Positions 1 through 29,321 of a DNA stretch of 64,000 bases are shown here, one piece after another (the stretch's first letter is position 1; every line of letters begins with the position of its first letter). Origin of the DNA: Vitrella brassicaformis CCMP3155 (Eukaryota; Protista; Chromerida); NCBI GenBank assembly GCA_001179505.1, contig CDMY01000356.1:372001-436000 (forward strand). The letters run 5' to 3'. Both the position numbers and the translations under genes were made by a program. Under the pieces are notes generated by a model that saw only the letters and a program-made list of their open reading frames with translations, was not told the origin of the DNA and did not search any database.

Positions 1-3000
1 GTTCAAGGTGACTGAGGCCATGATGGCCACGGACGCCAACCTGTTTATCGAGATGCGGTACGACAAGCAAGGCGGCCGCCACTCCTCCCTCACCCCCGAC
101 GGCAGCCCCCAGCAGCAGCAGCAGCAGCAGGCGTCCTCTGCCTCGTTCACCGTCAACAAGGACGGCTATCGGTTCATCCCGCCCGACCCTCTTCTGCTGG
201 CCAAGGCCAACGCGCCCCCCACCGCCACGCTCAACGGCGGCAAAGGCAACTGGGACGCCAATACGGCCTTTATGGACTCGCACGCCTACGTCGTGTGGAA
301 GGTACCGTTACAGAAATAAAAGTGAAAGTGACAAGCCAAATTTTGGTGCCGGCCACCAAGAAGGGAATGCGTGTTCCCCTCCCTTGTCTCTCTGTCTACC
401 TATCCATCTCCAGGAGTACCACCATATCTTGGTTCCGGCCGAGGAGCTGCAGCTCAACGACACGTGGTGGGTGGCGGTCTTGAACTTCCCCAGCCAGTAC
501 CCCAACACCGTCACGCTCACGCCGACCATCGACGCGGCCACCAACGAGACCAGCTTCACCAACCGCATCAAAGACCTGCCCATGACTTTCAACATCCGAA
601 TCCGCCAGTTCCCCCACGGCGAGCGGCCCTGCCCGAGGGACTGCTCTGGCCATGGGGTGTGCCGCGCCGTGGGCAAGTGCCGGTGCGACACTGGCTGGGC
701 TGACAACGACTGCTCTGTACCGGCGCATGTGTTGGAGAGCGGTGAGGCGCTGCAGAAGTCCATCCCGGCCGGGGAGTGGAAGTACCACTACCTCGACATC
801 CCCTCGGAGGACGACAGTGACAGAGGTGGGTGGGAAAAAAGGGGGTGGGAGATCCACATATGCGGCAGCATTGGATGTGCTGTGCTGTGTGGATTGCTTT
901 GCTTGGTGTGGTGTGCAGACCGTGGCAACACGCTTCGGATCGAGATGGTGCACCGAGGCGGCGACCCTCTCATGTTCATCAAGGCCACAGACAAGCAGTG
1001 AGTGAGCATGACATACATACATGACTATGGCATGGCATATTATATGGCATCCCACGTACACTCACTACACCGCTAGCTAGTTGCGCACGTGACGTGACAC
1101 ATACGTATGTGTGAAGGAAAGGACCACCCCACGAAACCTGTTGGTTGGGCTGGTTGCCTTGCTGTGTCTGATATATATGATGTATGTATGTATGTGTGTG
1201 TCAGGGATTATCTGATTCCGACCCAGCGCAGCGAGGACCACACCTTCTATCTGCCAATGCGGCCGGGGGGGAGAAGGCAAATCGTAAGGAAGGGGCGCGC
1301 GCACTCACATAGTCGGGATGGACGGGGGAATAAAGACACACACACACCCACACCCCTACACACACAGACGCGTCACATGTGACTCACGTGTCGTGTTGTC
1401 CCTCCCGTCTGTGTGTTGTGTTGTGTTGCAGCTGCAGATCCAGATATCGCAGTACCCCTCCGACAGATGGTTCTTCGGTACGGACAAGACAAAGCGCACG
1501 CTGGACAGAGAGGAGAGGGGAGGAGAGTGGGGATTCACACACAAGGAAGGCACACACGGGGTCCCTGTCTGGTCTGTCGCCTCGCCAGGCATCTATAACT
1601 CACGCGCGGAGCGTCGGCGTGCGCTGCGAGACACGCAGTACTCGTTGCGCGTGACCCTTCTCAACGCCCCCTTCTCGCGCATCAACCTCTACATCTACGT
1701 CGTCCCTGCTATCGTAGTCGTCAGCACTTCACACACACACACACACACACACGCACTCACACACATAGATGTACTGCACTGCACTGCACTGCACGGCCCG
1801 CCCTGTCTGTCTGTCTGTCTGTCTGCATGCGTGTGTGTGTGCGCGTGTGTGGTGGTGTATCTATCTAACGGTCAGGTGTTTGTGATGCTGTGGGTGATGT
1901 ATGCCATCCACCGGAGCGTGCAGACGCGGCACAGATCGCGGCTCGACGCGCGGCAGCTGGAGATCATCCTGCATGCGGTGAGGGAGCGGCCACACGAGGC
2001 ACAAAACGGTCCGGCTCGCACACACTCACCCCACCCTGCTCTCTGTGCTGTGGGGGTGTCTATGTGCAGCGGATGGTCGGTCAGGACGGCGGTGCCTCGC
2101 CGCGCCGATTGAGCAACGTAGACGAGCTCTTCCCGCCCATCAAGTTCAAAGAGGCCCTCACCAAGACGCGCGTGTGGGGCCTCCACCACCACCACCGTGC
2201 ACCCAATCACTCGCGCAGCTTCCGCACACCGACACGGTCCACACACTCGTCAGTGACCTCACTCGCTGCGACGTCGCAGCCAGCCGATGGGAGCAGCGCC
2301 GAAGACCACACCAGCACCTCTCAGCCGCAGCAGCAGCCGACGGTCTTCGGCAGACCATCTTTTCAGTTCATCGGTGTGCCCATCAAAACAGAGTAATTAA
2401 TGCTCGTCAGTGTGTGTGTGTGTGTGTGCGTGTGTGTGTGTCTGCAGGTCCGCCGCTGGCCCCTCCCACTCCGCCCCCGCTCCCCTGCACAGACCTTTTA
2501 GGCCGCCAGGCATCCGATGCGACCACTCACAACGAACAGCCGCCAGACACGCCCCACCAACAAGCGACTCCGAGCGACAACGGCTCGGCAGCATCCCCGA
2601 TGCCATATCATCGTGGGCTGGTGGGTGGTGGGGCTGATAGTGCGAGTGACAATGGGATGGCCGAGAAGACGCCCAGCCGGTCGTGGACGGTGGCCACGGG
2701 CGACGAAGAGCTCTGGTCAGTAGAGAAGTGAGGGCTCGGCGGGTATATGTGGGATTTTGCGTCCGTCCGAGCGTCATCAATATCAGTGTGTGTGTGTGTG
2801 TCCGTGCCGTGTCTGGTCTGCAGCTGTTCCGTGTGTTTGGTCGAGTTCGACAAGGAGGACGAGGTGCGTGTGCTCGACTGCAGCCATGTCTTCCACAAGG
2901 ACTGCATCGACCAGTGGTTCACCGGGTCCACCGTCTGCCCGCTGTGCAAACGAGACTACGGCCCACCGCCACCACCGCCACCAGACCAAGTAACACAACC

Positions 3001-3343
3001 ACCACAACAAGAACAAGAGCAACAGCCACAGCTGGAAGGGGACCAGCAGCAGCAAGGTCACCAACAAGACAACACGGCAGCACCACCAGCAGCAGCAGCA
3101 GCGGATGGCTCTGACACCCCAGCCGCCCCACCAGCGGCAGCAGCGGCAGCGGCTAGCTCGTCCCCCGCCCCTCACACCGATATTTCCGTGGCCGATTTTT
3201 CGGCCCCTAGAGGGGCGGACGCGGCGAGTCGTCACAGTGGCGACGCAGTGATAGTGCCATTGGCCGTAGATGCGGCGAGTGGAGCAGAAGCGAGAGATAC
3301 GGATGGCGATACAGGGGCGGGGGTGGTGTTGAGGACGCCGTGA
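1..3343 (+). CDS. Membrane-anchored RING-H2 E3 ubiquitin ligase with an extracellular EGF-like domain (multi-exon, 5' end outside window)
   Basis: EGF-like CPRDCSGHGVCRAVGKCRCDTGWADNDCS (~630-715). Hydrophobic TM split over exons (NLYIYVVPAIVV|VFVMLWVMYAI). RING-H2 CSVCLVEF..LDCSHVFHKDCIDQWFTGSTVCPLCK (~2825-2950). GT-AG introns (e.g. 302-413, 826-918, 1720-1875). Stop TGA 3341-3343. Confidence 0.85.
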
Positions 3344-4200
3344 CAGACAGACAGACAGACAGGCAGGGAGGGAGGGAGGGGGAGTGTGAAAGCGCTTTTC
3401 TATATTGTGGAAGAGTGGACGCGATGTGAGGTGTTTTTTGGTGATCGCGTGTGTGCGTATATCTGTTTGTGGGTGCTGTTTGTGGGGTGGGAGATGGGCG
3501 AGTAGGGAGGGATGGGTGGGCAAGGAAGACTGACTGTTTTTGTGACTCTCCGTCCGGACAGACAGACAGACAAGGGAGGTTGAGAGGGGGGTGGGGGGTG
3601 GCGGGGAGAAGGCAGCCGTGCTTTGTGCGTCCATACATGCGTGTGTGAGTGCATTTATCGACCCACTCAGTGGGACAGACAGACAGGCAGACAGACACAC
3701 AGACATTCAGACAGACAAATGGACCAGTGAGCCAACCGTGTCAGTCAGCGGGGCGGTTGATAGATCTCATCCATGTCATCCATGTGGTGTCTGTCCATGT
3801 GCGTGCATCGATCATGATGTATATGATGTGTGTGCGTGTGCGTGTGCGTGTGTGTGTTTTTTCGACAGACATTCATTGCCGCGCGATGCGATCGATGCGT
3901 GCATGTCAGTCAGTACGTGTGAGGCAGGCCTCTTGTCGTCAAGATCTGCATCTATCTATCTTATCTCATGCGTGCGTTGGGTTGGGAGGGAGGCGCCCTT
4001 ATGGCATGCGCTGTGTGTCTTTGTGTGGCAGGTGGGGTGGACCGATCGTGTGTGTGTGTGTGTGAGAGAGCTTGCTCTTTTTGCTCAACCACCGACCGAC
4101 CGACAGCAACTTGAGTGTGCGTGTGTTGGTTGGTTGGTTGATCGATCAGCTCACGCCCCTCCATCGCCCCTACACCCCATCCAGGGAACACAAGACGCAG
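3344..4200. repeat. Microsatellite-rich 3' UTR/intergenic region: (GACA)n, (GGGA)n, (GT)n, (GCGT)n
   Basis: Visible tracts, e.g. gacagacagacagacagac at ~3342-3360 and (GT)n/(GCGT)n at 3826-3856. ORFs here are low-complexity artefacts. Confidence 0.7.
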
Positions 4201-14616: not shown

Positions 14617-17600
14617 ATGACTGCAGCTGACACAGAGGTGACGGCGGGCGACTTGGTGTCTGCCATAGTGGAGGAATACAGCCTGAGCGCCGATGAGGTT
14701 TTTCAGATGATGCATCAACAGGTATTTCATGAGAGACGGACAGACTTTGCCTGCCGTTGCGCTATGGTTAATGTATTTCACACAGGCCCCCGCCCTCATC
14801 CCTGCCGACGACACCGCAAAGGACGTCAAACTGCCAAATTCGGCTCTTCAAGGGCTGGTATGGCTCATCTCGTGTCGCAACAATATCCCTTTGCCATCAC
14901 TCATCGCAACGGTCGCCACGAAGTGCAAGTGGCACGGGGACCCTTGCAATGCACTGCTGCCGCCAGCTGCATCCCCACTGCCCTTTCTGCCACCGTATCC
15001 CTACCCATTTCTGCATCCGGCTGCACAGAACGGCCAGCCAGCCGCCGCCGTGCCTCCAGTAGGCAAATCTCGCAGCACATGGCCACTACACATCCCGAGC
15101 TCTCTGTGGTGTCTCGTCAGGTGTGCAGGGGGAACGTGGATGAAGGTGACCACCCGCAGCCGTCTCACGGCCCTACCAAGCGAGCCGGCCCGGCTGTGCC
15201 TGTCAGAGGCCGGTCGAAGCGCCAGAACCGGGGCTCGGACAATCCTGCCGAAGCTTCCGCGACGCCATGGCTTGATGCCTGTGTCTCCTCGCAGCACATG
15301 TCGTCGCTCACGGCCGGCCGTGTTGAGTTCGACGGGACGCCTGGAGTGGTGGGCGAGGAGGGAGAGACGCGGCCATTTGCACTGCCCTGGGAGAGGAGCC
15401 GGGCTCTCATGGGCCATCCGCAGCCGCAGACCCAGGGAGGCGGTGCTGGTGCTGGTGGTGGTGCTGGTAGTGGTGGTGCTGGCGGGGAGGGGCTGGGTAA
15501 GGCCGTGTGGCAGATTCCCGAGAGGCGGCTGACTTTCCAGGTTGGCGAGCTCATTTTGATCCGTGCACCGGGGGGCGCCGGGGTGCCGCCATGGCCAGCG
15601 AGGGTCGCCGAGCTGTGTCACTATACGCCCCGCCCCTATCTGTGCGAGTGCCTTGGGGCGGTCATCCCGTTGCCATTATACAAACGGTAGGTATGTTGAT
15701 ATTGCACGCAGAGATGGATGGATGGATGGATGGACGGCTGTGTATCTATCGCTGTTGTGTGCGCTGCAGTGTGCGGTTGGCTCCCACGTTGGTCGCTGAG
15801 TATTCGCGCGACAGTGTGGTGGCTATCTCGGCGGCTCTCCAGGGGCATGCAACGCACTTCCCTGAGGGCCCCAACCAGGTGAAGAGACCTGTCTGTCCAT
15901 GGACACCATCCCTGTCCTGTCTGCCACACGCACGTGGATCCATCCATCCATCCATCCGTATGCCTACCCACAGATAGCGAATTTCGAGCAGGCCATCCAA
16001 CAGGCGGAGCAGTTGCATGAGAAGATACGCTTACACGGTTGGTAGGTCACGTCGGTCGACATTCATGGCATCTCTCCATCACCCAAGACACCTTGCCTTG
16101 CCTTTCCCTGCCTACACTGCATGCATGTGTGTGGCTCGCTGCCGTGGCTCACCTCACAGGTCCTGTGCACCATTCTGTGGACTTTGACTACAGTGCCATT
16201 CAGCCGGTGGACAAGGCGTCGGACATCGAGGGCGCCATCTACACATTTGACCCTACGGTGAGTGAGACATCCATCCATCCATCCATGGTGCTGCTGGTGT
16301 CGTGTCGCTTCAGTTGGGCGGCAAGTGGGTCGCCCTTCTGCTCGACGGCAGCGAGCTCTCCGTATATGACCCCTTTCCCGTAGAGGTACCTACCGTACGC
16401 ATGAGGATCAGTCATGCTTCACATCATGTTGCTACGTCACTGGTGTGTCTGTCAGGTTTTTGGCTTTGCCGTCGCCAAAGCTCGCGCCGAGGAGAAGGTG
16501 TGCGAAGCCATGTACAAATCCAGCCCCTCTGAGGCGCCCAAGCGCATCAAGGCCACACACACGGTCAGAGGGAAACGTAACGACACAGGCAGGGGTCATA
16601 CGTGCATCGATCGCATCGCATCGCTGGCAACCGTCGATGCTCCTTGCCTGTCGGTCTGCAGGTCGCCAAAGAAGAGAAATTCTTCTCCAATGCCATTGAG
16701 GCATCGCAGGCTCTCCAACTGAGTGAGCGCGCCCACCAAACACACAACACCAGATACCACACCCATCAATTGGTTGTCATTTGTGTGTGTCTCATCAGGT
16801 GACATGGAGGTGCTCCAGCGCCTCACCGCCCCCGAGCTCACCATCCCCTCCCACCCATCACCGACAGCACAAGACGACACCAACACTAAAGCCCCCTCGC
16901 CCTTCCATGACCACAGCAATGACGACGAGGAGACCAAAGAGGGCAGTCCCACATCGGTGCGCATGGAGCTGGACGAGGGCGCCTGGCAATTGGAGTACCT
17001 GCAGTGGGCCTATGAGGACCGGCCGGTGTGGGCCAAGCGGCTGTCCAGGGGGTACGACGTGCTGGTGCGGGCGCAGTGCAGGAGTGATGGGTTGATCCAC
17101 TTCCTGCAGACGCCCCAGCAGGCTGTGTACCTATGCTCCCTCAGTGAGTCAGTGAGAAGGGATATACATCAAAAGAGACAGACAAGAGACATGGTGCCTT
17201 CCCTGCCACTCACTCTCCCTCCTCGTATCCGCTTTTCTGCTTTCACAGAAGACGTTGGTGATTTAGCGATGCTTCTCTCCGAGGCGGCCGAGAGCATCCT
17301 CGGCTGGTCCTTCACCACCTACCCTGTCACGGGGGACACCAAATCCCCTTCACCCCTGCCCCACTCTGACCCCCTCGGCATTGCCCATCCCCCAGAGGCG
17401 ACCCCCTGGTCACGATTCTCATGCACTATCATCGACCACTACACCAACGCCCTGCAGAAGATGCCTCTGGACTGGACCGACCTCACGGCCGAGAGGGAGA
17501 GCTCCCGCCCTATAGCCGGATGGGTGAAGGCTGAGTACAAGGGGGCGTGTGCCAAGAAGGACCAGGTTGTGCGGTACTTCCCCTCCATGCGGGCCGCTGC

Positions 17601-18922
17601 AGCCACCCTCAACATGAGTCAGCGACAGAGACACGTCATAGCTCGCATGACATACATGGAATCCATTCATTCTCGCGTTGATGCGTGTGCGTGTGCGTGT
17701 GTGTGTCAGGTCTCACAGCTGTGGCGATGGTGGCCAAGGGGTTCTGGCAGGGCTGCCGCGGGTGGAAACTCAGCATCCTGCCAGTCACAGAAGACGACCA
17801 CCTGCCCTCGTCCCGCCACCCCCGCACGCCCCGCGGCTCACACGCCCCGCCAACCCCATGCCAGCCCACACACTCGCCGTCTCCCGCCCTCTTCCACAAC
17901 GCACAGCGATCACACAGCCAAATCGCCCCACCACAGCAGCCGAGAGGCGGGCCACCAGCAGCAGCAGCAGCAACAGCAACAGCAGGTCCGAGGAAAACCC
18001 GCAGCAAAGGTTCGCACTTCCCACACCGCCCCATGCGGACAATGGAGTGGGCTGACGGCGTGCCGAAGCCGATGGAGATCCACGTGCCAGTGGCTGTGGA
18101 GCAGCAGCAGGAGGAGACGGCCGGAGGGGATGATGGTGCGGGTGGTGGTGAAGGTGCGGCGACTGCGGGTAAGGTGTACCTGTACGCGCATCCGGTGGGC
18201 GAGCGTCAGTTCCAGTGGGTGAGGACGGGGGCCAAGATGAACCCGGAGTCCATACGGGTCAAGGCCGTCTGCCTCGCCAACAACACCACACACTACTACA
18301 TGTCGCAGAGGGAGTGCGCCGAAGCCCTAGGACTCGGTAGGTACTGACTGACAACAGACAAAGAAAGAGACACCGCCCACACACTCACCACCGATTGGTG
18401 TCCCATCCCTCTGCGTGTGTGTGTGTGTGCGCAGCCCAGTGCTATGTGTCGATGGCTGTCAACGGCCTGAAGAAAGTGGAAGGTTGGCGATTCTTCAGAG
18501 TGGTCGACCAGCACAACAGGCGCCGCGTCGACTCGCTCAACCGCACTTTGTCGCGGATGGAGGAGCGGGGCAGCTTCGACCGACACTCGGTGCCCGTCAC
18601 CACGCCGCCCATGGTGGACTGGCACGCCGCACGACGATTCTTCCGCACTCAACAACACGCTGCTGCTGCACCAGCTGCCCTTGCCCCACCACAGCAGCAG
18701 GAGCAGGAGCAGGGGCAGGGGCAGGGGCAGGGGCAGGGGCAGCAGGATGTCTCACCGGCTGTCGTCGTGAAGACGGAGGGTGCGTGTGGTGGGGATGGGG
18801 GCATGGAGGTGGACAAATTGGCGTCGCTGCTCACTGCTGGCGCTGCTGATGGTGGTGCTGCTGGTGCTGCCGATGGTGGTGCTGATGGAGCGGGAGACAC
18901 GGAGGAAGAGACGCAGGGGTGA
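14617..18922 (+). CDS. PWWP-domain protein with two NUMOD1/IENR1-like helix-turn-helix repeats
   Basis: Exon chain from ATG 14617. PWWP-like FQVGELILIRAPGGAGVPPWPARV ... ANFEQAIQQAEQL (~15532-16030). Repeat 1: VVRYFPSMRAAAATLNM|SLTAVAMVAKGFWQGCRGWKL. Repeat 2: VKAVCLANNTTHYYMSQRECAEALGL|AQCYVSMAVNGLKKVEGWRF. Stop 18920-18922. Confidence 0.7.
18700..18745 (+). repeat. Coding hexamer repeat (CAGGAG/CAGGGG)n encoding QEQEQGQGQGQG
   Basis: caggagcaggagcaggggcaggggcaggggcaggggcaggggcag visible in sequence. Confidence 0.85.
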
Positions 18923-22808: not shown

Positions 22809-25800
22809 CTACTTTGGCTGCTCCTTCCTACTCGAGAATTTGGATGGCAGCGTGTCGCCAAGCAGCTGCACTCCTCTGATCTTCTTTTTCGGCTTCCCCA
22901 CCTGCCCGCCTGGCGGCCCCTCAGCCTCGAGGTCGATGTAAATGGGTGAGGGCAGTCCTTGCCCTTCACGTGGCTGAGGGGCTGCTGCTGCTGCTGCTGC
23001 TGCGGGGGCCGGCGACTGCTGCTGTTGGGGCACGACGCGACGACGAACGGGGTCCCTGGCCACCAGTGCATCTGAGGGGCCGGCTGCTGCTGCTGGTGGT
23101 GGTGGTGGGTGCGACCTGTGGGGATGGGGAGAGGGGGACTGTTCGGCTGCTCCGACGATGCAGTCATCGGGCGACTCACCCCTCACTCCCCCCATTCCCA
23201 CGACTGGCGCCCTACTGCGGCCATCGGGCTGCGGAACACCACGTGGGTCACCACGGTGTCGGACTGACGGACGCCACGCGGGCACGTTGCGGCTGTCATC
23301 GTCCCACTTGTCAGGCCCACTCCAGCGGTCAGGCTGCTCCTCTCGGCGTCGCTTCTGAGGCAAGACAGCAGCAGCAGCCGCAGCAGCAGCGGCAGGAGGC
23401 GGCAATGGAAACACGTCCATGTTACCATCCGCCGGCTCGTGTGCTGATGGTGGGGGCGGGAATGGGGCAGGTCCAGCTGCTGCTGCTGCGGCGGCGGCGG
23501 CGGCGGGGACTGGTGCCAACGCCAGGCCAGCCGTGATGACGAATTGCTGCTCGTGGTCGCTAGGATGGTGGCGGGGCCGCGGCAGCACGTCAAAGACAGG
23601 TCTGGCGATGCTCTGGGCCGCTGCAGGGGGGACGCAGTCACTCACTGCACACACAACAGACGCAGAGGGAATGGAAATGGCACCATGATGCGAGAGTCTT
23701 GGGTACCTACCCATCTGTTGGACTTTGACATCCTTGAACTGAGAGAGGCCCCTGGCGCCGATCAGGGCGTCTTGGCTGTCCCACTTGATGACACTGCACA
23801 CCATACATCCAAACATCAACGTGATCAGCAAATCGCCTGCGCGTCCCCTCCAGCTTACGGGGGTATCTTCATGTTCGTCCCCTCCAGCTTCAAATCCGTG
23901 TTGATCACTGTTTTGAGCGGCTGGTCGAGCGACTGGACCTGCTTGGATCCGGTAGCAGCAGCCATCTCTGGGCCATCCAAACCACAACCACATCACAACA
24001 TACACGTCGTCACGAAGACACCTCCCTCCCTCCCTCCCTCACCTGGCGCCAACGCAGGTAGTTTCACCCTCAACGCCTTCTCGACACGCGACATCAGCTC
24101 GTCAAACTCGCTCGGCTGGCCGACTTCCAAATGCCGCACCAGCCTGAGGAACTTCTGCAGAGAGTCGGCCTCGCTGGACTGGCTGGTCAGATATCCCCTG
24201 ATGATGTCGGTGCGCTCTCTGCCGAGGCAGTTCAGGTCGATGGGTACCTCCGCCGACGTGCCAGCAGGCTCAGCGGCCAGCACGTCTTTGAGCAGGTCCA
24301 CGAGATGCTGACGGAGGGTGATCGGCGTGAAGGCCGCCTCTGGCAAGCGAAGCGCTGACAAGGAAAGACAGTGAGACGCACGGTTGTGCTGTGCTGTGCT
24401 GTGCTCGTGTGTGTTAATTCACACTCACCTGGTGCGGTGTGGTCGAGCCGTGTGAGCATCATAATGAGTCGCTCCCGCCACTGGCCCCTCGATGCGAGCA
24501 TCCCACAATTGACGAGGGCGATGGTGGCGCCATAGCCCAGGCTGAGGAAGTCCTCAATGACGGCCGCGAGGGCGTTGGGATGGTCGCGTGGCAGCCCCTT
24601 GACATTCTCTGAACACGCACATGCACACACAACATAGCCAGACACACAATTCGATGCGTGCCGTGCATGTGTGCGTCGCTCGCTCACCGAGGACGATGTA
24701 TGGGTTTTTGGTCAGCCGGATGATCTCTACCAGCTGGAAGAGGACTTCGCGCTTCTCACCGGCCCTGTCGTCGCGGAACCGCTCTGCGGTGGGCCGAGCG
24801 GTGCTGAAGCCCTGACACATCGACGTATTCACATTGATGTATTCAGCACACATGTGAGGAAATGCCTGCCCGCTCACCTGGCAAGGCGTGCCCGCATCCA
24901 CTATTCTGGCCTCCTTCAGGTGGCGAAGGACGTCACCGGCGACCTGCCGTCCTTGTGAAGGCAGCTCGCTGTCGTCCTCGCCCCACGTGGTCAACACGCC
25001 AGCCACGTCAGCGAGCGAGGCCAGGACGCAGTCGGGGCCATTGGGGAAGCCGCGATTGGTCCCAGGAGGTCCACTCATGAGGTACTGCACACCCACACAG
25101 GCGCACATTCAAAAGACAGTCCCCAGACGTGGACGGATTGCTCCTTACCTTGAAGGCCTTGGCGCATGGCTCGTCCTTCTCAACCCCCAGGACGTTCAGC
25201 TGCACGCCGCGCTCCTTCGCCTCCATGTCAATGCCCGCCGTCAGAAAGCCCGCGCTGCAGCAATACGATGCAGTCTTGACAGGGCCGCCCTCGCCTCCAC
25301 CTCCACCCACGCCGCCCATGGCCCGCTCGATAACAGGGCACCTGTCGAGTGGCGCCTGCTTGGTGGCCCGGATGATCTCCAGGGGCACCCTGTCGATCGT
25401 GTCGGCGACTTTCTCGGCCTCGCCGTCGTGGCGAATGCGGCGCGCCCGCGCAAGGCGATCTGCATGCTCCTCTTGCATGAGCCCCGGGCCTCCCGTCTCG
25501 AGTGAGAATGGGGAGATGAAGTGGCGACAGACGAGGTGGGTGGGCGGCCGAGAGTGCGGAGAGCCGGTGCTGAGTTGGTGCTCCAGGCGCTTCATGACGC
25601 ACATGGTCTCGCTCGGACATCGGCAGAAGGACAGCGGCACCTCCCAAAGTATCTCCCAGGACACAGTGGGTGGGAAGGGGTTGGTGCCTCGCCTCGAGAG
25701 AAGGGAGGGCACGTCCACATCCATGTCGTCTGATGCCGAGGGCACGCGCACGTCCTCCGATGTCTGCCTGTGGGGGAGCCGGGCGAAGACGCTGAGGACC

Positions 25801-28766
25801 TTGCACCCCTTGTCGCCGATGTCATGACTCGGCAGGCTGATGGGCACCTCCGTGAAGCCGATGTGGGCCGTGAGGCTGAGGTAGTAGAGGACCTTGACGT
25901 GCGGCGACAAGACCGAGCACGGCTCGGCCAAGCAGGCGAAGCGCCGCTCATTGCGGGACTCGCGGAGGGGCAGAAGCTCCACGACGGCGCCCTTGGGGAT
26001 CTCGCCTTCTGGGGCGTCCACATTGATCTCGCTCCTGTCGAGGTGGCAGCGATATGGGCAGCAGGGGTCGACCGAGGGGAAGATGCGACGAAAGCACTCG
26101 GTGTGGAAGAAGCGCCCGCACGACTGCATGCAGGCGAGAGAAAGACCATTATCCATACAGGCAGGCAGGCAGGCAAGCAGTGAGGGATTGCGTACGTACG
26201 CGTACCTGATCGCTACATGGATGGAGTGGTTGGTTGGTACCCCCACAGATGGTGCAGTACTCGCTAACTTCCCCGCCCCCCCACATGTCCTTCCCCTTCT
26301 TCTTGAGCGCCTCAAAACACGTCTTGCACAGCACCACCTTGTCCGCCAGGACCCCATCCAGCCACGCCATCTGGACCGATCTCCTCTTCTGCTGGCGCCC
26401 CTGCTGTGTGGCGATGGGGATGAACCTGGAGAGAAGAGGGTGGTCCACGACATGAGCACGCTCATCCACAGGCTTCTTGCAACGCCAGCAGCACCGCTCA
26501 TCGTGCTCGTCCGTCTCGTCCTGCGACTCATCCCGTGAGTCGCAAAGCGGCTGCGAATCGTCATCGGGAGCCGCTTTGAGGCAGACGAGACGATGTCCAG
26601 CCAGCCTCTCGAGGTCGCGGAGCGATTTGAAGGTCAAGATGAGCTTGCCGCCGACCCGATAAAGGCCAAAGGGGCGGGACTGGGCTGGCGACTCTGCATA
26701 CACACCACACCACACCACACCACACCAGACCATACACACGCGGAATGGTGCAGCGGCTGAGTGTGTGGTCTGAGATGTGCCTACGTTTTGTGTGTTCGTC
26801 GTTGATCATCCTTTCGATCCTTTCGATCGCACGACGCTCATCCTTGAAGTCTGCGAATAAGCGGCGAGACCGAGACCTGCAGGAAGGCACAAAACACACC
26901 AAGACAGACACACGTGTGTGTGTGTGTGTGTGTCTGTGATGTGTGTATGGGGAATGTACATCAGGCCGCCCGGCATACGTAGACTCACTTGTGCACGGGT
27001 AAGGTGAGGTCGACACCCTCCTTGTTCACCAGCGACGTGTCGGGACAGCCCTACACATTCACAACAAACAGGTCAACGACTATTCTGCCTGCCTGCCTGC
27101 CTGCCTGCATATCCCTTTCTGTTACTCACCGCCCATTTGACGACGTATGTGTTGCCTTTCCTGTCACACAGGACGAGTCTGATCTCCTGCAGCCACGACG
27201 AAAATGCCATGAAGATGGCTGCAGGAGCTTTTCGAGTGGATGGATCGTCGAACCTCGATCTCGTAGTGAGCCTGCCTCTCGGGCACCGTGGCCAACGGGT
27301 CCTCGTGGAGCCTCCTGAACCGCTCGATGCGGTCGATCATGCGTAGCCGCTTCTTGTTGTCATGCTCCATCTCAGCCACCAGCTCGTAAGCAGGCGCCGC
27401 CTCAAGCTGCTGCAGCACCTCGCGCAACTGGTCACACACACACACAGAGAGAGAGAAACAAATATGGACAAATGGCTCATCGGTCGCAATTATGTGTGTT
27501 GTGGGTCTCTGACGTGGCCAAAGAAGGCATCGTAGGTGTCAGGGCTGTCCAGCTGACCCGCCATATGATGCATGTGCCGGGGGATGCCGAGCGCGTTGAG
27601 TTGTTCGTCCGTCGCGCTCGCCAGCAGCTGCCTGGCCGAGCGGACGTGGGATGGCTCACTGAAGGCGGCTGCGGCTGCTGCTGGTGGTGCGTCTGCGAGG
27701 GCCCTCTGGTCCTCGTTGTAGATGTCATGCAGGCGCACCGTGTACAGAAGAGCCGCCAAACGCTCAGCAGCCTGGAACACATCCACACACACACACACAC
27801 ACACATATGCATATGCCAACAATGATTGAGGGCGTGTTGGTACGTATGTGAGAGAGTGGTCTGACCTCAATTTCGGCCTCGTTGACCACCCGAATCACCC
27901 TGAAGAAGGGTATCTTTTTGGTACCATACTCATGGTACAACTCCTGCACCAGCACGGCCTGCAGACACACGGACACACACAGACGGCACAGAGCACTACA
28001 GGGAATGCAGGCGGAGAGTGCTGATCCGTGTCTAGTGCTCGCCTCGTCGGGTTGGAGGCTCGGCAGAAGGATAAGTGTGCCCCCCAGCGACTGGACGACA
28101 CACAAATAACACCACACCCACAGCACAGACGTCATGAATGGATGGTTGATGGATAGAATCAGTGAGTCGTACCCTCTTTGGTGGCTGCAGCCTCCTTCTC
28201 CTCTTGGGCAGGCCAGGCTCCTCTTTGATGACCACTCCCGGCGGCAAAAGCATCCCACCACCGCCACCGCCACTATCATCAGCAGCAGCACCACCAGCGG
28301 CCGCAGCAGCAGCCGCTCCGCCAACATCTGCACTGTCGTCTGGCCGCCCTGCGATGTGCCGGCCCTCCCCTCTTCGCCCCTGCCGGCTCCTGACCTCACG
28401 GTCTCGACCATCCACAAATCCCAACCCCGTCGCCGAGTCAGCTTCTTGCCGATTGCGCGAGGGAGCTCGACTTCGACTAGTGCCGGTGGAAGCCGCTGGC
28501 TGCTCGTGGCTGCCTGGCCGCTGGCTCGGTCGGCGGATGCGACGGTCGGGGCTTCGAGACCGTCCCGCGTCAGCCCGTGGCTCGTCGCAAGGCTCGTCGA
28601 CTCGTCGCTGGCGGTGACTCTTGGCAGTAGGCTTCTCCGCAGCGGGTGGCGCGTTGCGGCCTTCTGCACGGGCAACGCGAGGGGGAGAGGGAGAGGGCTC
28701 GGGTGACGGACTTGTAAGGTCTATCGCGTCCTCAGCTGTTCGCCCTTGCTGTTGCTGTAGTGCCAT
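22809..28766 (-). CDS. C5-cytosine DNA methyltransferase with an N-terminal ADD (ATRX-DNMT3-DNMT3L-like) zinc finger
   Basis: After splicing, motifs appear in canonical order: I KTASYCCSAGFLTAGI (~25280-25236), II LGVEKD, IV RIVDAGTPCQ|GFS (intron 24877-24812), VI IVLE|NVKGL (intron 24687-24609), VIII GQWRERL (24483-24469), IX-like IPP|VIKWDSQD, X QQM|VSDCVPPAAAQSIA. ADD finger at 26493-26041. ATG 28766, stop 22811-22809. Confidence 0.85.
26041..26493 (-). other. ADD-like zinc-finger domain of the methyltransferase
   Basis: CWRC..DHPLL..VVLCKTCF..SEYCTICGG..HPCSDQ|SCGRFFHTECFRRIF..CCPYRCH. This follows the GATA-like CxxC-HP-CxxC plus PHD-like pattern of ATRX/DNMT3 ADD domains. One phase-0 intron at 26205-26124. 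Confidence 0.75.
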
Positions 28767-29321
28767 CCTCCGCAACTCCCCTGATAGGCTAAGGCCTTCC
28801 TTGGTCAGCGGTAAGCGATGACGGCTGAGAGACCGATGCTATGCTATGGGAGAGTTCCAATACGCTCTCATGATGTCATTGATGATTGATTGATGATTGA
28901 TCGAACTCATTCAGGACAGACGAGAAATGACGATCCACAAGAAGTCACATATTCGTAGGCATCAATGCACCAAGGAAGACAGATTGATGCCTGAATGAAT
29001 GAATTAGTCCTGCAAAGCGACGGGACAGATGCCAAGGAGTGAGTCCCCCCGTCCCCTACCACTGACTGCCCTCCCCTGCCAGTGTGCCATATCCATGGTC
29101 CTTCGAGATGCAATTTGATCGAACCCATTGCAACCAACACGACGTGAAATCACCATCCATAAGAAGTCACACATACGTATGCGTCAATGCGTCCAGGAAA
29201 ACAAATTGGCGCCTGGCCTGCATGAGTGCTGCAAAGCGACGCGGCCCATCCCATCGCCCTCTCACCTCACCCCATCGTCACCAACCACCGCCCTCGCTCA
29301 GCCACCATTCCGCCCGCCACC

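What the first reader, a model, noticed from the sequence alone, without database searches (positions are those of the whole stretch)
22809..28766. Hidden ADD-domain C5-cytosine DNA methyltransferase with a non-DNMT3 catalytic signature
Seen in sequence: introns cut the catalytic motifs, so no single ORF shows them. Splicing restores motif IV PCQ|GFS (66-nt intron 24877-24812), motif VI E|NV, motif VIII QWRER and motif X in canonical order, downstream of an ADD-like finger. Established: the ADD + C5-MTase architecture is the hallmark of animal DNMT3, where ADD reads unmethylated H3K4. DNMT3 has SPCNDLS, whereas PCQGFS is typical of DNMT1/CMT/DIM-2 and bacterial enzymes. Apicomplexan relatives are mainly known for DNMT2. 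Inference: this may be an independently assembled histone-guided DNA methylation writer in a chromerid-like alveolate.
Basis: partly seen in the sequence, partly recalled or inferred. Interest (0 to 1): 0.93.

Follow-up and report, generated by a model that had tools for sequence, protein, structure and literature searches.

The report
Reader-fused orphan cytosine methyltransferase gene
This is a real, expressed 17-exon gene of the alga Vitrella brassicaformis that joins histone-reader-like modules to a very divergent, bacterial-type DNA cytosine-5 methyltransferase domain; two published DNMT surveys do not list it, but neither the claimed ADD domain nor enzyme activity is shown.

Summary
The minus strand at 22809-28766 carries a 17-exon, 1563-aa reading frame. 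Spliced transcript contigs in two runs use the junctions, including the 66-nt intron 24877-24812 inside PCQ|GFS. My model is identical to a public Vitrella brassicaformis protein (P0001), auto-named DNA (cytosine-5-)-methyltransferase.

The spliced protein hits Pfam PF00145 (55.9 bits, E 6e-15), and an AlphaFold model matches M.HaeIII, M.HhaI and DNMT1, but not DNMT3. So the domain is a C5-MTase and is not DNMT3-like.

Only motifs IV-VIII are canonical. Motif I reads LMSGPPG, motif IX lacks TPRE and motif X has SD for GN, so activity is uncertain.

The "ADD" is not established. There is a C4 pair with a 50-residue spacer plus a canonical C4HC3 PHD finger, and all Pfam scores are below threshold. 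ADD structures top two Foldseek rankings, but not significantly and from a low-confidence model.

A chromodomain-like segment lies upstream (also below threshold).

No relatives were found apart from a 0.95-kb partial duplicate elsewhere in the genome. Two DNMT surveys (2023, 2025) do not list this gene.

Verdict: a new variant of reader-fused eukaryotic DNMTs, of moderate interest.

The parts
22809..28766 (-). Whole coding region: 17 exons, 1563 aa plus stop. Identical to public protein P0001 of Vitrella brassicaformis CCMP3155.
28173..28766 (-). Exon 1 (aa 1-198), a low-complexity N-terminus. The ATG is at 28766 and an in-frame stop lies upstream at 28839-28841.
   Evidence: (X4 piece ends at 28173).
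28043..28090 (-). Exon 2 (48 nt), followed by the only GC-AG intron (28042-27959).
   Evidence: Placed by sequence. Needed to fill the 142 nt of the X4 contig between 28173 and 27770.
27866..27958 (-). Exon 3 (93 nt).
27514..27771 (-). Exon 4.
   Evidence: X4 contig piece 27514-27770.
27254..27427 (-). Exon 5. Its end holds the start of the chromodomain-like segment (HYEIE).
   Evidence: Exons 5-8 sum to 385 nt, the unplaced length in the X4 contig.
27130..27186 (-). Exon 6 (57 nt), the core of the chromodomain-like segment (YVVKW).
26989..27050 (-). Exon 7 (62 nt).
26785..26876 (-). Exon 8 (92 nt).
26206..26693 (-). Exon 9: the C4 finger and the first half of the PHD-like finger.
   Evidence: X4 contig piece 26206-26693.
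25149..26123 (-). Exon 10 (aa 623-947): the second half of the PHD-like finger plus about 250 aa (651-900) with no detectable family.
   Evidence: X4 piece 25149-26123. No relatives in 1.84 billion representatives apart from itself. No Pfam family.
24878..25084 (-). Exon 11: the likely motif I (YLMSGPPGTNRGF) through motif IV up to PCQ.
   Evidence: X4 piece 24877-25084; alignment A3.
24812..24877 (-). The 66-nt GT-AG intron that splits PCQ|GFS.
   Evidence: It is absent from the X4 and X6 spliced contigs and present in DNA run X1.
24688..24811 (-). Exon 12 (GFS ... IVL).
   Evidence: X6 contig piece 24688-24810.
24429..24608 (-). Exon 13: motif VI (ENV) through motif VIII (QWRER).
   Evidence: X4 and X6 pieces 24429-24608. 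Pfam PF00145.
24043..24354 (-). Exon 14, the first part of the target-recognition region.
   Evidence: X4 piece 24043-24354.
23859..23967 (-). Exon 15.
   Evidence: GT-AG sites by sequence. Contig lengths fit.
23711..23793 (-). Exon 16: the degenerate motif IX (DSQDALIGARGLSQF).
22809..23644 (-). Exon 17: motif X (QQMVSDCVPP), a low-complexity tail of about 250 aa, and the stop.
   Evidence: An X6 piece starts at 23644.
26843..27274 (-). Chromodomain-like segment, aa 383-440, spread over exons 5-8.
   Evidence: Pfam Chromo 13.5 bits, E 0.068, below the 25.1 cut-off. The top two PDB sequence hits are LHP1 chromodomains, E 0.1.
26302..26496 (-). C4 zinc-finger candidate, aa 526-590: C528/C531 and C582/C585 with a 50-residue spacer.
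   Evidence: In the AF2 model the spacer is low-confidence. VIA matches ZAD and GATA fingers at Z 3-5.
26040..26262 (-). PHD-type C4HC3 finger, aa 604-650, split by intron 26205-26124.
   Evidence: PHD_NSD 19.6 bits, PF21255 14.3 bits. ATXR5 PHD E 0.045. Nearest atlas clusters are all PHD.
23571..25157 (-). C5-cytosine methyltransferase domain, aa about 945-1310, spread over exons 10/11-17.
   Evidence: PF00145 55.9 bits. TIGR00675 50.7 bits. Foldseek M.HaeIII E 4.8e-10. Atlas score 0.94, all 100 hits PF00145.

Best explanation
This is a nuclear, expressed Vitrella brassicaformis gene. It encodes a 1563-aa chromatin protein.

Domain order:
- a low-complexity N-terminus;
- a chromodomain-like segment (aa 383-440);
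- a three-zinc module of a C4 finger plus a C4HC3 PHD finger (aa 526-650), arranged in the same order as an ADD domain;
- about 250 residues with no detectable family;
- a highly divergent C5-cytosine methyltransferase domain (aa ~945-1310) of the bacterial/DNMT1 sequence type;
- a low-complexity tail.

Shown: the gene structure, the transcripts, and the methyltransferase fold with the catalytic Cys (PCQ), ENV and QxRxR.

Inferred: On that reading it is a lineage-specific, independently assembled counterpart of DNMT3 or chromomethylase.

Because the cofactor-binding motifs I, IX and X are degenerate, activity may be weak, unusual or lost.
For: - Gene model and splicing. Identity to annotated protein P0001.
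- Methyltransferase domain: PF00145 55.9 bits, E 5.9e-15, against a cut-off of 22. TIGR00675 E 2e-13. My own HMM built from 76 prokaryotic MTases, E 1.5e-14 over motifs IV-VIII.
- The domain is co-linear with 44 prokaryotic MTases over its full length, including motif I, the TRD landmarks and motifs IX/X.
- AF2 with that alignment gives a core pLDDT of 85-95. Foldseek then gives M.HaeIII 4.8e-10, followed by M.HhaI, DNMT1, MET1, ZMET2 and DIM2.
- Protein-language-model features score 0.94, with all 100 hits in PF00145.
- Reader modules: all eight PHD ligands are present. PHD families are the best Pfam, PDB and atlas matches. ADD chains rank first in two Foldseek libraries. Chromodomains are the best Pfam and PDB matches for aa 375-465.
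Against: - The HMMs see only motifs IV-VIII. The N-terminal (motifs I-III) and C-terminal (IX-X) parts give no Pfam hit on their own.
- Motif I reads LMSGPPG rather than FxGxG. TPRE of motif IX is missing. GN of motif X is SD.
- The AF2 cofactor subdomain has pLDDT 50-63 and the TRD is below 50.
- Every reader-domain score is below the curated threshold.
- The chromodomain-like segment has only two of the three cage aromatics (Cys where LHP1 has Trp).
- No orthologue is available to show conservation.
- I found no published 5mC data for Vitrella.
Confidence: 0.6

Rival explanations
1. It is a catalytically dead or impaired paralogue, a DNMT3L-like pseudoenzyme. It keeps the fold and the reader modules and works as a chromatin-binding scaffold or regulator, for example of the other Vitrella DNMT (the BAH-containing CEM15752).
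For: Motifs I, IX and X are degenerate and invisible to HMMs. The cofactor subdomain is modelled with low confidence. The domain is extremely divergent: the best hit outside Vitrella in 5.8 billion proteins has E 2.6e-4.
Against: The catalytic loop residues that dead paralogues usually lose are all intact: PCQ Cys, ENV Glu and both Arg of QxRxR. As I recall it, active DNMT3A also has a non-canonical motif I (FDGIATG), so a variant motif I is not proof of inactivity.
Confidence: 0.28
2. It is an RNA m5C methyltransferase with a DNMT fold, like DNMT2/TRDMT1, rather than a DNA enzyme.
For: Sarre et al. 2025 (PMC12344493) note that for orphan DNMTs it is hard to predict DNA versus RNA substrates. 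DNMT2 appears among the Foldseek hits at rank 43.
Against: The same paper notes that RNA-directed DNMT2 and DNMT6 consistently lack companion domains. This protein carries PHD and chromodomain-like modules. Vitrella already has a separate DNMT2, CEM37813 (PMC10538959 supplement). The TRD landmarks align with DNA MTases.
Confidence: 0.06
3. It is an annotation or assembly artefact, or a decaying pseudogene. The motifs line up only because introns were chosen to fit.
For: A decaying 0.95-kb partial copy of exons 13-16 exists elsewhere in the genome.
Against: One 4817-nt spliced contig covers exon 1 through exon 17 in run X4, with a second spliced contig in X6. There are no variant letters at the window copy in the RNA runs. 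The 1563-codon frame is open across 16 introns, and the public gene model is identical.
Confidence: 0.03

Closest known systems
Animal DNMT3A/3B/3L (PWWP + ADD + C5-MTase)
   Same: A zinc-finger histone-reader module sits N-terminal to a C5-MTase domain. The order C4 finger then PHD, with three zinc sites, is the same. ADD chains are the top Foldseek matches of the finger model, though not significantly.
   Different: The catalytic domain is not DNMT3-like: PCQGFS rather than the PCN-type motif IV, no DNMT3 chain in the PDB sequence hits, and none in the Foldseek top 50. No PWWP was found. The PHD is C4HC3, the C4 spacer is 50 residues, and the Pfam ADD models are below threshold.
Plant chromomethylases (CMT3/ZMET2) and DNMT1/DIM-2
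   Same: The catalytic signature is PCQ/ENV/QxRxR. ZMET2, MET1, DNMT1 and DIM2 are confident Foldseek matches to the core. Pairing a chromodomain with a DNMT follows the same logic.
   Different: Here the chromodomain-like segment lies far N-terminal, not embedded in the MTase domain. No BAH or RFTS domain was detected. Sequence similarity to ZMET2/DNMT1-type chains is only E about 1, against 4.5e-4 for M.HhaI.
Diatom DNMT4 with an N-terminal chromodomain, and raphidophyte PHD + DNMT1-like enzymes (Hoguin et al. 2023, PMC9998398)
   Same: These are SAR-lineage DNMTs with a single chromodomain or PHD companion domain in front of the MTase domain.
   Different: This protein combines both kinds of module. 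Vitrella's DNMT4-like protein in Funabiki et al. 2023 is a different, much longer protein: CEM15752, with its MTase at residues 2269-2619 and a canonical motif I. No sequence relative of this protein was found in any searched database.
Orphan, laterally acquired eukaryotic DNMTs (Sarre et al. 2025, PMC12344493)
   Same: The MTase domain is lineage-restricted. Its nearest look-alikes are phage and bacterial Dcm-type enzymes.
   Different: That paper describes orphans as generally lacking companion domains. This one has 16 introns, reader-like modules and expression, so it is fully integrated into the host genome.

Membership tests
C5-cytosine DNA methyltransferase (Pfam PF00145 / Dcm superfamily) | Scores above the curated Pfam gathering threshold. 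| tested here: met
   55.9 bits against 22, E 5.9e-15, on P0001. The match covers only profile positions 62-195.
C5-cytosine DNA methyltransferase (Pfam PF00145 / Dcm superfamily) | Catalytic motif IV (PC with the nucleophilic Cys), motif VI (ENV) and motif VIII (QxRxR), in that order. | tested here: met
   AGTPCQGFS at 1011-1019, ENV at 1058-1060, QWRER at 1100-1104.
C5-cytosine DNA methyltransferase (Pfam PF00145 / Dcm superfamily) | Cofactor motif I (FxGxG) and motif X (GN-V). | tested here: inconclusive
   The aligned positions read LMSGPPG and VSDCVPP, and TPRE of motif IX is absent. HMMs do not align these parts.
C5-cytosine DNA methyltransferase (Pfam PF00145 / Dcm superfamily) | The C5-MTase fold. 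| tested here: met
   An AF2 model built from a 45-sequence alignment has a core pLDDT of 85-95. Foldseek gives M.HaeIII E 4.8e-10, and 135 PDB chains at E<=0.001. Caveat: the alignment rows are prokaryotic MTases.
C5-cytosine DNA methyltransferase (Pfam PF00145 / Dcm superfamily) | SAM-dependent methyl transfer to cytosine C5. | not testable with these tools
   Needs a biochemical assay.
DNMT3 | The catalytic domain groups with DNMT3 (PCN-type motif IV, from established knowledge). | tested here: not met
   Motif IV is PCQGFS. No DNMT3 chain appears among PDB phmmer hits at E<=10 or in the Foldseek top 50. No phylogeny with family references could be built.
DNMT3 | A PWWP domain. | tested here: not met
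   No PWWP hit on P0001 at E<=1.
ADD domain (ATRX-DNMT3-DNMT3L) | Matches the curated ADD profiles (PF17980, PF17981, PF21255). | tested here: not met
   Only PF21255 appears, at 14.3 bits against a cut-off of 27. Generic PHD_NSD scores higher, at 19.6 bits.
ADD domain (ATRX-DNMT3-DNMT3L) | A GATA-like C4 finger packed against an atypical all-Cys PHD finger plus a C-terminal helix. | tested here: inconclusive
   A C4 pair followed by a PHD is present in that order. However, the spacer is 50 residues and the PHD is C4HC3. The AF2 model has pLDDT 49. ATRX, CHR20 and DNMT3 ADD rank first in Foldseek at E 0.15-0.2. VIA gives Z<5 and prefers ZAD, GATA and LIM fingers.
ADD domain (ATRX-DNMT3-DNMT3L) | Binds the H3 tail with unmethylated K4. 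| not testable with these tools
   Needs peptide binding assays.
PHD finger | The C4HC3 ligand pattern and a profile match. | tested here: inconclusive
   The ligands are C606, C609, C619, C624, H629, C632, C643/644 and C648. The best scores are PHD families but fall below the cut-offs. ATXR5 PHD has E 0.045. The ten best named atlas clusters are all PHD, with a top score of 0.85.
Chromodomain | A profile match and a three-residue aromatic cage. | tested here: inconclusive
   PF00385 scores 13.5 bits against 25.1. LHP1 chromodomain has E 0.1. Two of the three cage positions are aromatic (Tyr, Trp) and the third is Cys.
DNMT1 / CMT / DIM-2 superfamily | A BAH domain (and RFTS in DNMT1) next to the MTase domain. 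| tested here: not met
   No Pfam family at E<=10 in aa 660-810, or at E<=1 in aa 650-900.

The most novel reading that the evidence does not exclude
Vitrella independently rebuilt the logic of DNMT3 and chromomethylase. A methyltransferase core, most similar to prokaryotic or phage enzymes, was captured and gained 16 introns. It was then fused to an ADD-like (C4 + PHD) module and a chromodomain-like module. The result is an active, histone-tail-guided de novo DNA methyltransferase in the closest free-living relatives of apicomplexans. This would be a lineage-specific writer unrelated to DNMT1, 3, 4, 5 and 6, and it is missing from current DNMT catalogues.
Probability: 0.3. Interest if true: 0.75.

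Novelty: new variant of a known kind. Interest (0 to 1): 0.5.

Why it matters
DNA methylation in apicomplexans and their relatives is poorly understood. Two broad DNMT surveys give Vitrella either only a DNMT4-like enzyme plus DNMT2 (Funabiki et al. 2023) or no DNMT at all (Sarre et al. 2025). This gene adds an expressed, intron-rich, reader-fused cytosine methyltransferase candidate to that lineage.

Orphan DNMTs are described as generally lacking companion domains. One that has acquired PHD/ADD-like and chromodomain-like modules would therefore be a clear case of a foreign-type methyltransferase being wired into eukaryotic chromatin, convergently with DNMT3 and CMT.

It also gives a concrete gene to disrupt or express when asking whether chromerids methylate their DNA.

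The value is limited because the protein is already in public databases with an automatic name, has no known orthologues, and may be inactive.

Tried and rejected
- **Unspliced ORF pieces in Pfam and PDB sequence searches**: only one piece reached PF00145 at the cut-off. The pieces are too short, so I moved on once P0001 was retrieved.
- **Motif I at SYCCSAGFLTAG (aa 908-919)**: this was my first guess. I rejected it for YLMSGPPGTNRGF (948-960), because that is where the MAFFT alignments place it (3 and 45 sequences) and it keeps the usual distance of about 64 residues to PCQ.
- **Relatives of the finger region, the whole C-terminal half and the MTase domain** and of exon 10 in 1.84 billion representatives: only the protein itself, the partial duplicate P0004 and two weak bacterial hits turned up. 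P0002 and P0003 are low-complexity or repeat matches with no informative Pfam family.
- **Using the paralogue to test conservation of the fingers**: not possible. The copy in L001 covers only exons 13-16, with 85% nucleotide identity including introns, a deletion within exon 14, and 22 non-synonymous against 10 synonymous codon differences.
- **Single-sequence AF2 of the finger module**: too poor (pLDDT 49) to settle the ADD question.
- **Is this the DNMT4-like Vitrella protein of Funabiki et al.?** No. CEM15752 has its MTase at 2269-2619 and a canonical motif I.
- **The neighbouring "PWWP" gene noted at 14617-18922**: the four largest plus-strand ORFs gave no Pfam hit at E<=0.01. I did not pursue it further.
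- **A phylogeny with DNMT1-6 references**: could not be built, because no tool returned those sequences and typing them from memory or from the supplements was not appropriate.
Full report
**Observation.** No single ORF on the minus strand between 22809 and 28766 shows a methyltransferase domain. The best unspliced piece (24235-24711) reaches PF00145 at only 22.2 bits.

Laying public runs on the region settled the gene structure:
- Runs X4 and X6 hold spliced contigs, and runs X1 and X5 hold the unspliced DNA.
- One 4817-nt X4 contig joins 28800..28173, 27770..27514, 26693..26206, 26123..25149, 25084..24877, 24608..24429 and 24354..24043.
- An X6 contig adds 24810..24688.
- The stretches of the X4 contig that the table did not place are 142, 385 and 123 nt. 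They are exactly filled by exons I located from splice sites: 48+93+1 nt, 174+57+62+92 nt, and 123 nt.

The result is a 17-exon, 4692-nt coding sequence from ATG 28766 to the stop at 22809-22811. It has fifteen GT-AG introns and one GC-AG intron, each 64-112 nt long.

The translation (1563 aa) is identical to a public protein that the exhaustive search returned, P0001. That protein is an "unnamed protein product" of Vitrella brassicaformis CCMP3155, auto-named DNA (cytosine-5-)-methyltransferase in UniRef and carrying PF00145. The gene is hidden only from a raw-ORF view.

**The methyltransferase domain.**

Evidence that this is a C5-MTase:
- PF00145 scores 55.9 bits (E 5.9e-15) on the spliced protein, and TIGR00675 scores 50.7 bits.
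- An HMM I built from 76 prokaryotic MTases fetched gives E 1.5e-14.
- Fed with a 45-sequence alignment, AlphaFold gives pTM 0.61, with pLDDT 85-95 for the core and for motif X.
- Foldseek returns M.HaeIII (E 4.8e-10), then M.HhaI, DNMT1, MET1, ZMET2, DIM2 and DNMT2, with no DNMT3 in the top 50.
- PDB sequence search ranks M.HhaI (4.5e-4) and M.HaeIII far above the DNMT1/ZMET2-type chains (about 1.2), with no DNMT3.
- Protein-language-model features place the domain among phage and bacterial Dcm clusters (score 0.94, all 100 hits PF00145).

The limits of that evidence:
- All of these profiles align only motifs IV-VIII (AGTPCQGFS, ENV, QWRER).
- The flanks give no profile hit on their own.
- They are still co-linear with 44 prokaryotic MTases in a MAFFT alignment. 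Motif I falls on YLMSGPPGTNRGF at the start of exon 11. The TRD landmarks are echoed. Motif IX is DSQDALIGARGLSQF and lacks TPRE. Motif X is VSDCVPP, with SD for GN.
- The cofactor subdomain has pLDDT of only 50-63, and the TRD is below 50.

Its cofactor motifs are unusual enough that activity cannot be assumed.

**The "ADD".** Residues 527-649 hold C528/C531 ... C582/C585 with a 50-residue spacer. A complete C4HC3 PHD pattern follows: C606, C609, C619, C624, H629, C632, C643/644, C648.

- Pfam gives only sub-threshold hits, and generic PHD_NSD (19.6 bits) scores above the DNMT3 ADD-PHD model PF21255 (14.3 bits, cut-off 27).
- The best PDB sequence match is the ATXR5 PHD finger (E 0.045), and no ADD chain appears at E<=10.
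- The ten best named atlas clusters by protein-language-model features are all PHD families.
- A single-sequence AlphaFold model is poor (pLDDT 49), with the 50-residue spacer disordered.
- Even so, Foldseek ranks five ATRX ADD chains first (142 aligned columns), followed by four DNMT3A/3L/3B chains in PDB. It ranks the ADD region of Arabidopsis CHR20, which I take to be the plant ATRX orthologue, first in Swiss-Prot. All of these have E 0.15-1.2 and TM about 0.25.
- The structure-only aligner does not reproduce this ranking. It prefers ZAD, GATA and LIM fingers at Z<5.

I read this as a three-zinc, two-finger module with ADD-like order. Membership in the ADD family is not shown. The His-containing PHD and the long spacer argue against simple membership.

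**Other parts.**
- Residues 383-440 are spread over four small exons. They resemble a chromodomain: Pfam Chromo 13.5 bits (E 0.07), and LHP1 chromodomains are the top two PDB hits at E 0.1. Tyr and Trp occupy two cage positions and Cys the third.
- Residues 210-380 and 651-900 match no family.
- Exon 10 has no relative in 1.84 billion cluster representatives.
- No PWWP, BAH or RFTS domain is detectable.

**Relatives and literature.**
- The word-based searches found nothing beyond the protein itself, two weak bacterial MTases, and P0004.
- P0004 is a Vitrella protein whose locus (L001) contains a 0.95-kb duplicate of exons 13-16. The copy includes introns, has 85% nucleotide identity and a deletion within exon 14, and shows no sign of purifying selection.
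- All 13 "other letters" seen in the DNA runs are the bases of this duplicate. They are absent from the RNA contigs, so the transcripts come from the window copy.
- Funabiki et al. 2023 (PMC10538959) list only CEM15752 and a DNMT2 for Vitrella. CEM15752 is DNMT4-like, with its MTase at 2269-2619, and is a different protein.
- Sarre et al. 2025 (PMC12344493) score Vitrella as having no DNMT and describe orphan DNMTs as generally lacking companion domains.
- Hoguin et al. 2023 (PMC9998398) describe diatom DNMT4 with chromodomains and raphidophyte PHD-DNMT1-like enzymes, so single reader-DNMT fusions are known in the SAR group.
- The scan's own notes flag another locus in this genome as a chromodomain + PHD-like C5-MTase (s1-218426) and two as GHKL-BAH-DNMT fusions. 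I could not inspect any of them.

**Interpretation.**

The best reading (confidence about 0.6) is a lineage-specific, chromatin-reader-guided cytosine-5 DNA methyltransferase. It would be assembled from an MTase core most similar to prokaryotic ones plus eukaryotic reader modules.
- Shown: the gene, its expression, the fold and the catalytic-loop residues.
- Inferred: histone reading, DNA as the substrate, and activity.

The rivals are:
- A DNMT3L-like pseudoenzyme (about 0.28). The degenerate motifs I, IX and X favour it; the intact PCQ, ENV and RxR argue against it.
- An RNA methyltransferase (about 0.06).
- An annotation artefact or pseudogene (about 0.03), which the transcripts contradict.

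**Verdict.** This is a new variant of the known class of reader-fused eukaryotic DNMTs. The protein is already deposited and auto-annotated, but two published DNMT surveys I checked do not list it and I found no paper that describes it. Interest is moderate (0.5). It would rise if 5mC and activity are demonstrated, or if the finger module proves to be a true or convergent ADD.

Noticed in passing
L001:11847-12724 (Vitrella contig CDMY01000688.1), matching window 24629-23696: A 0.95-kb partial duplicate of exons 13-16 of this gene, introns included. Nucleotide identity is 85% overall (exons 94%, introns 89%), with a deletion within exon 14. It sits inside another annotated gene (P0004, 916 aa, no Pfam domain). 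It lacks motifs I-IV and X and shows 22 non-synonymous against 10 synonymous codon differences, so it is probably a decaying fragment.
   Followed up: yes
window 23750-23875 and 24516-24591: All 13 variant letters seen in DNA runs X1 and X5 are exactly the bases of the L001 duplicate. They are therefore paralogue reads or contigs, not alleles or RNA editing. The RNA contigs (X4, X6) show none of them. One X5 contig (24468-25201) carries the paralogue letters yet runs past the duplication boundary at 24629, so it is either a chimeric contig or a sign of gene conversion.
   Followed up: partly
window 24021-24040, 26158-26180, 23201-23400, 27601-27800: Short simple motifs, such as GGGA repeats at the donor of intron 24042-23968 and CTGC/GCAG repeats inside intron 26205-26124, have k-mer depths of 500-3500 against about 20-50 for the gene. 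They generate dozens of false joints in the contig data. They look like genome-wide intronic microsatellite-like motifs.
   Followed up: no
window 27959-28042: This is the only GC-AG intron of the gene (donor GCGAGC). It follows a 48-nt micro-exon (28090-28043), which is needed to account for the transcript contig length.
   Followed up: partly
window 28800 and upstream: The X4 transcript contig extends about 760 nt upstream of position 28800, although an in-frame stop at 28839-28841 precedes the ATG at 28766. This is either a long 5' UTR or a contig bridging into the neighbouring gene.
   Followed up: no
window 14617-18922: The scan notes a PWWP reader gene about 4 kb downstream of this gene's 3' end. 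A quick Pfam scan of the four largest plus-strand ORFs there found nothing at E<=0.01, so the call is unconfirmed. It may need splicing to show the domain.
   Followed up: partly
same genome, other pieces (scan notes s1-218426, s1-218423, s1-233244): First-stage notes flag another chromodomain + PHD-like C5-MTase locus and two GHKL-ATPase + BAH + C5-MTase loci in this genome. The latter two may correspond to CEM15752. Vitrella may therefore have several reader-fused DNMTs, even though one published survey scores it as having none.
   Followed up: no
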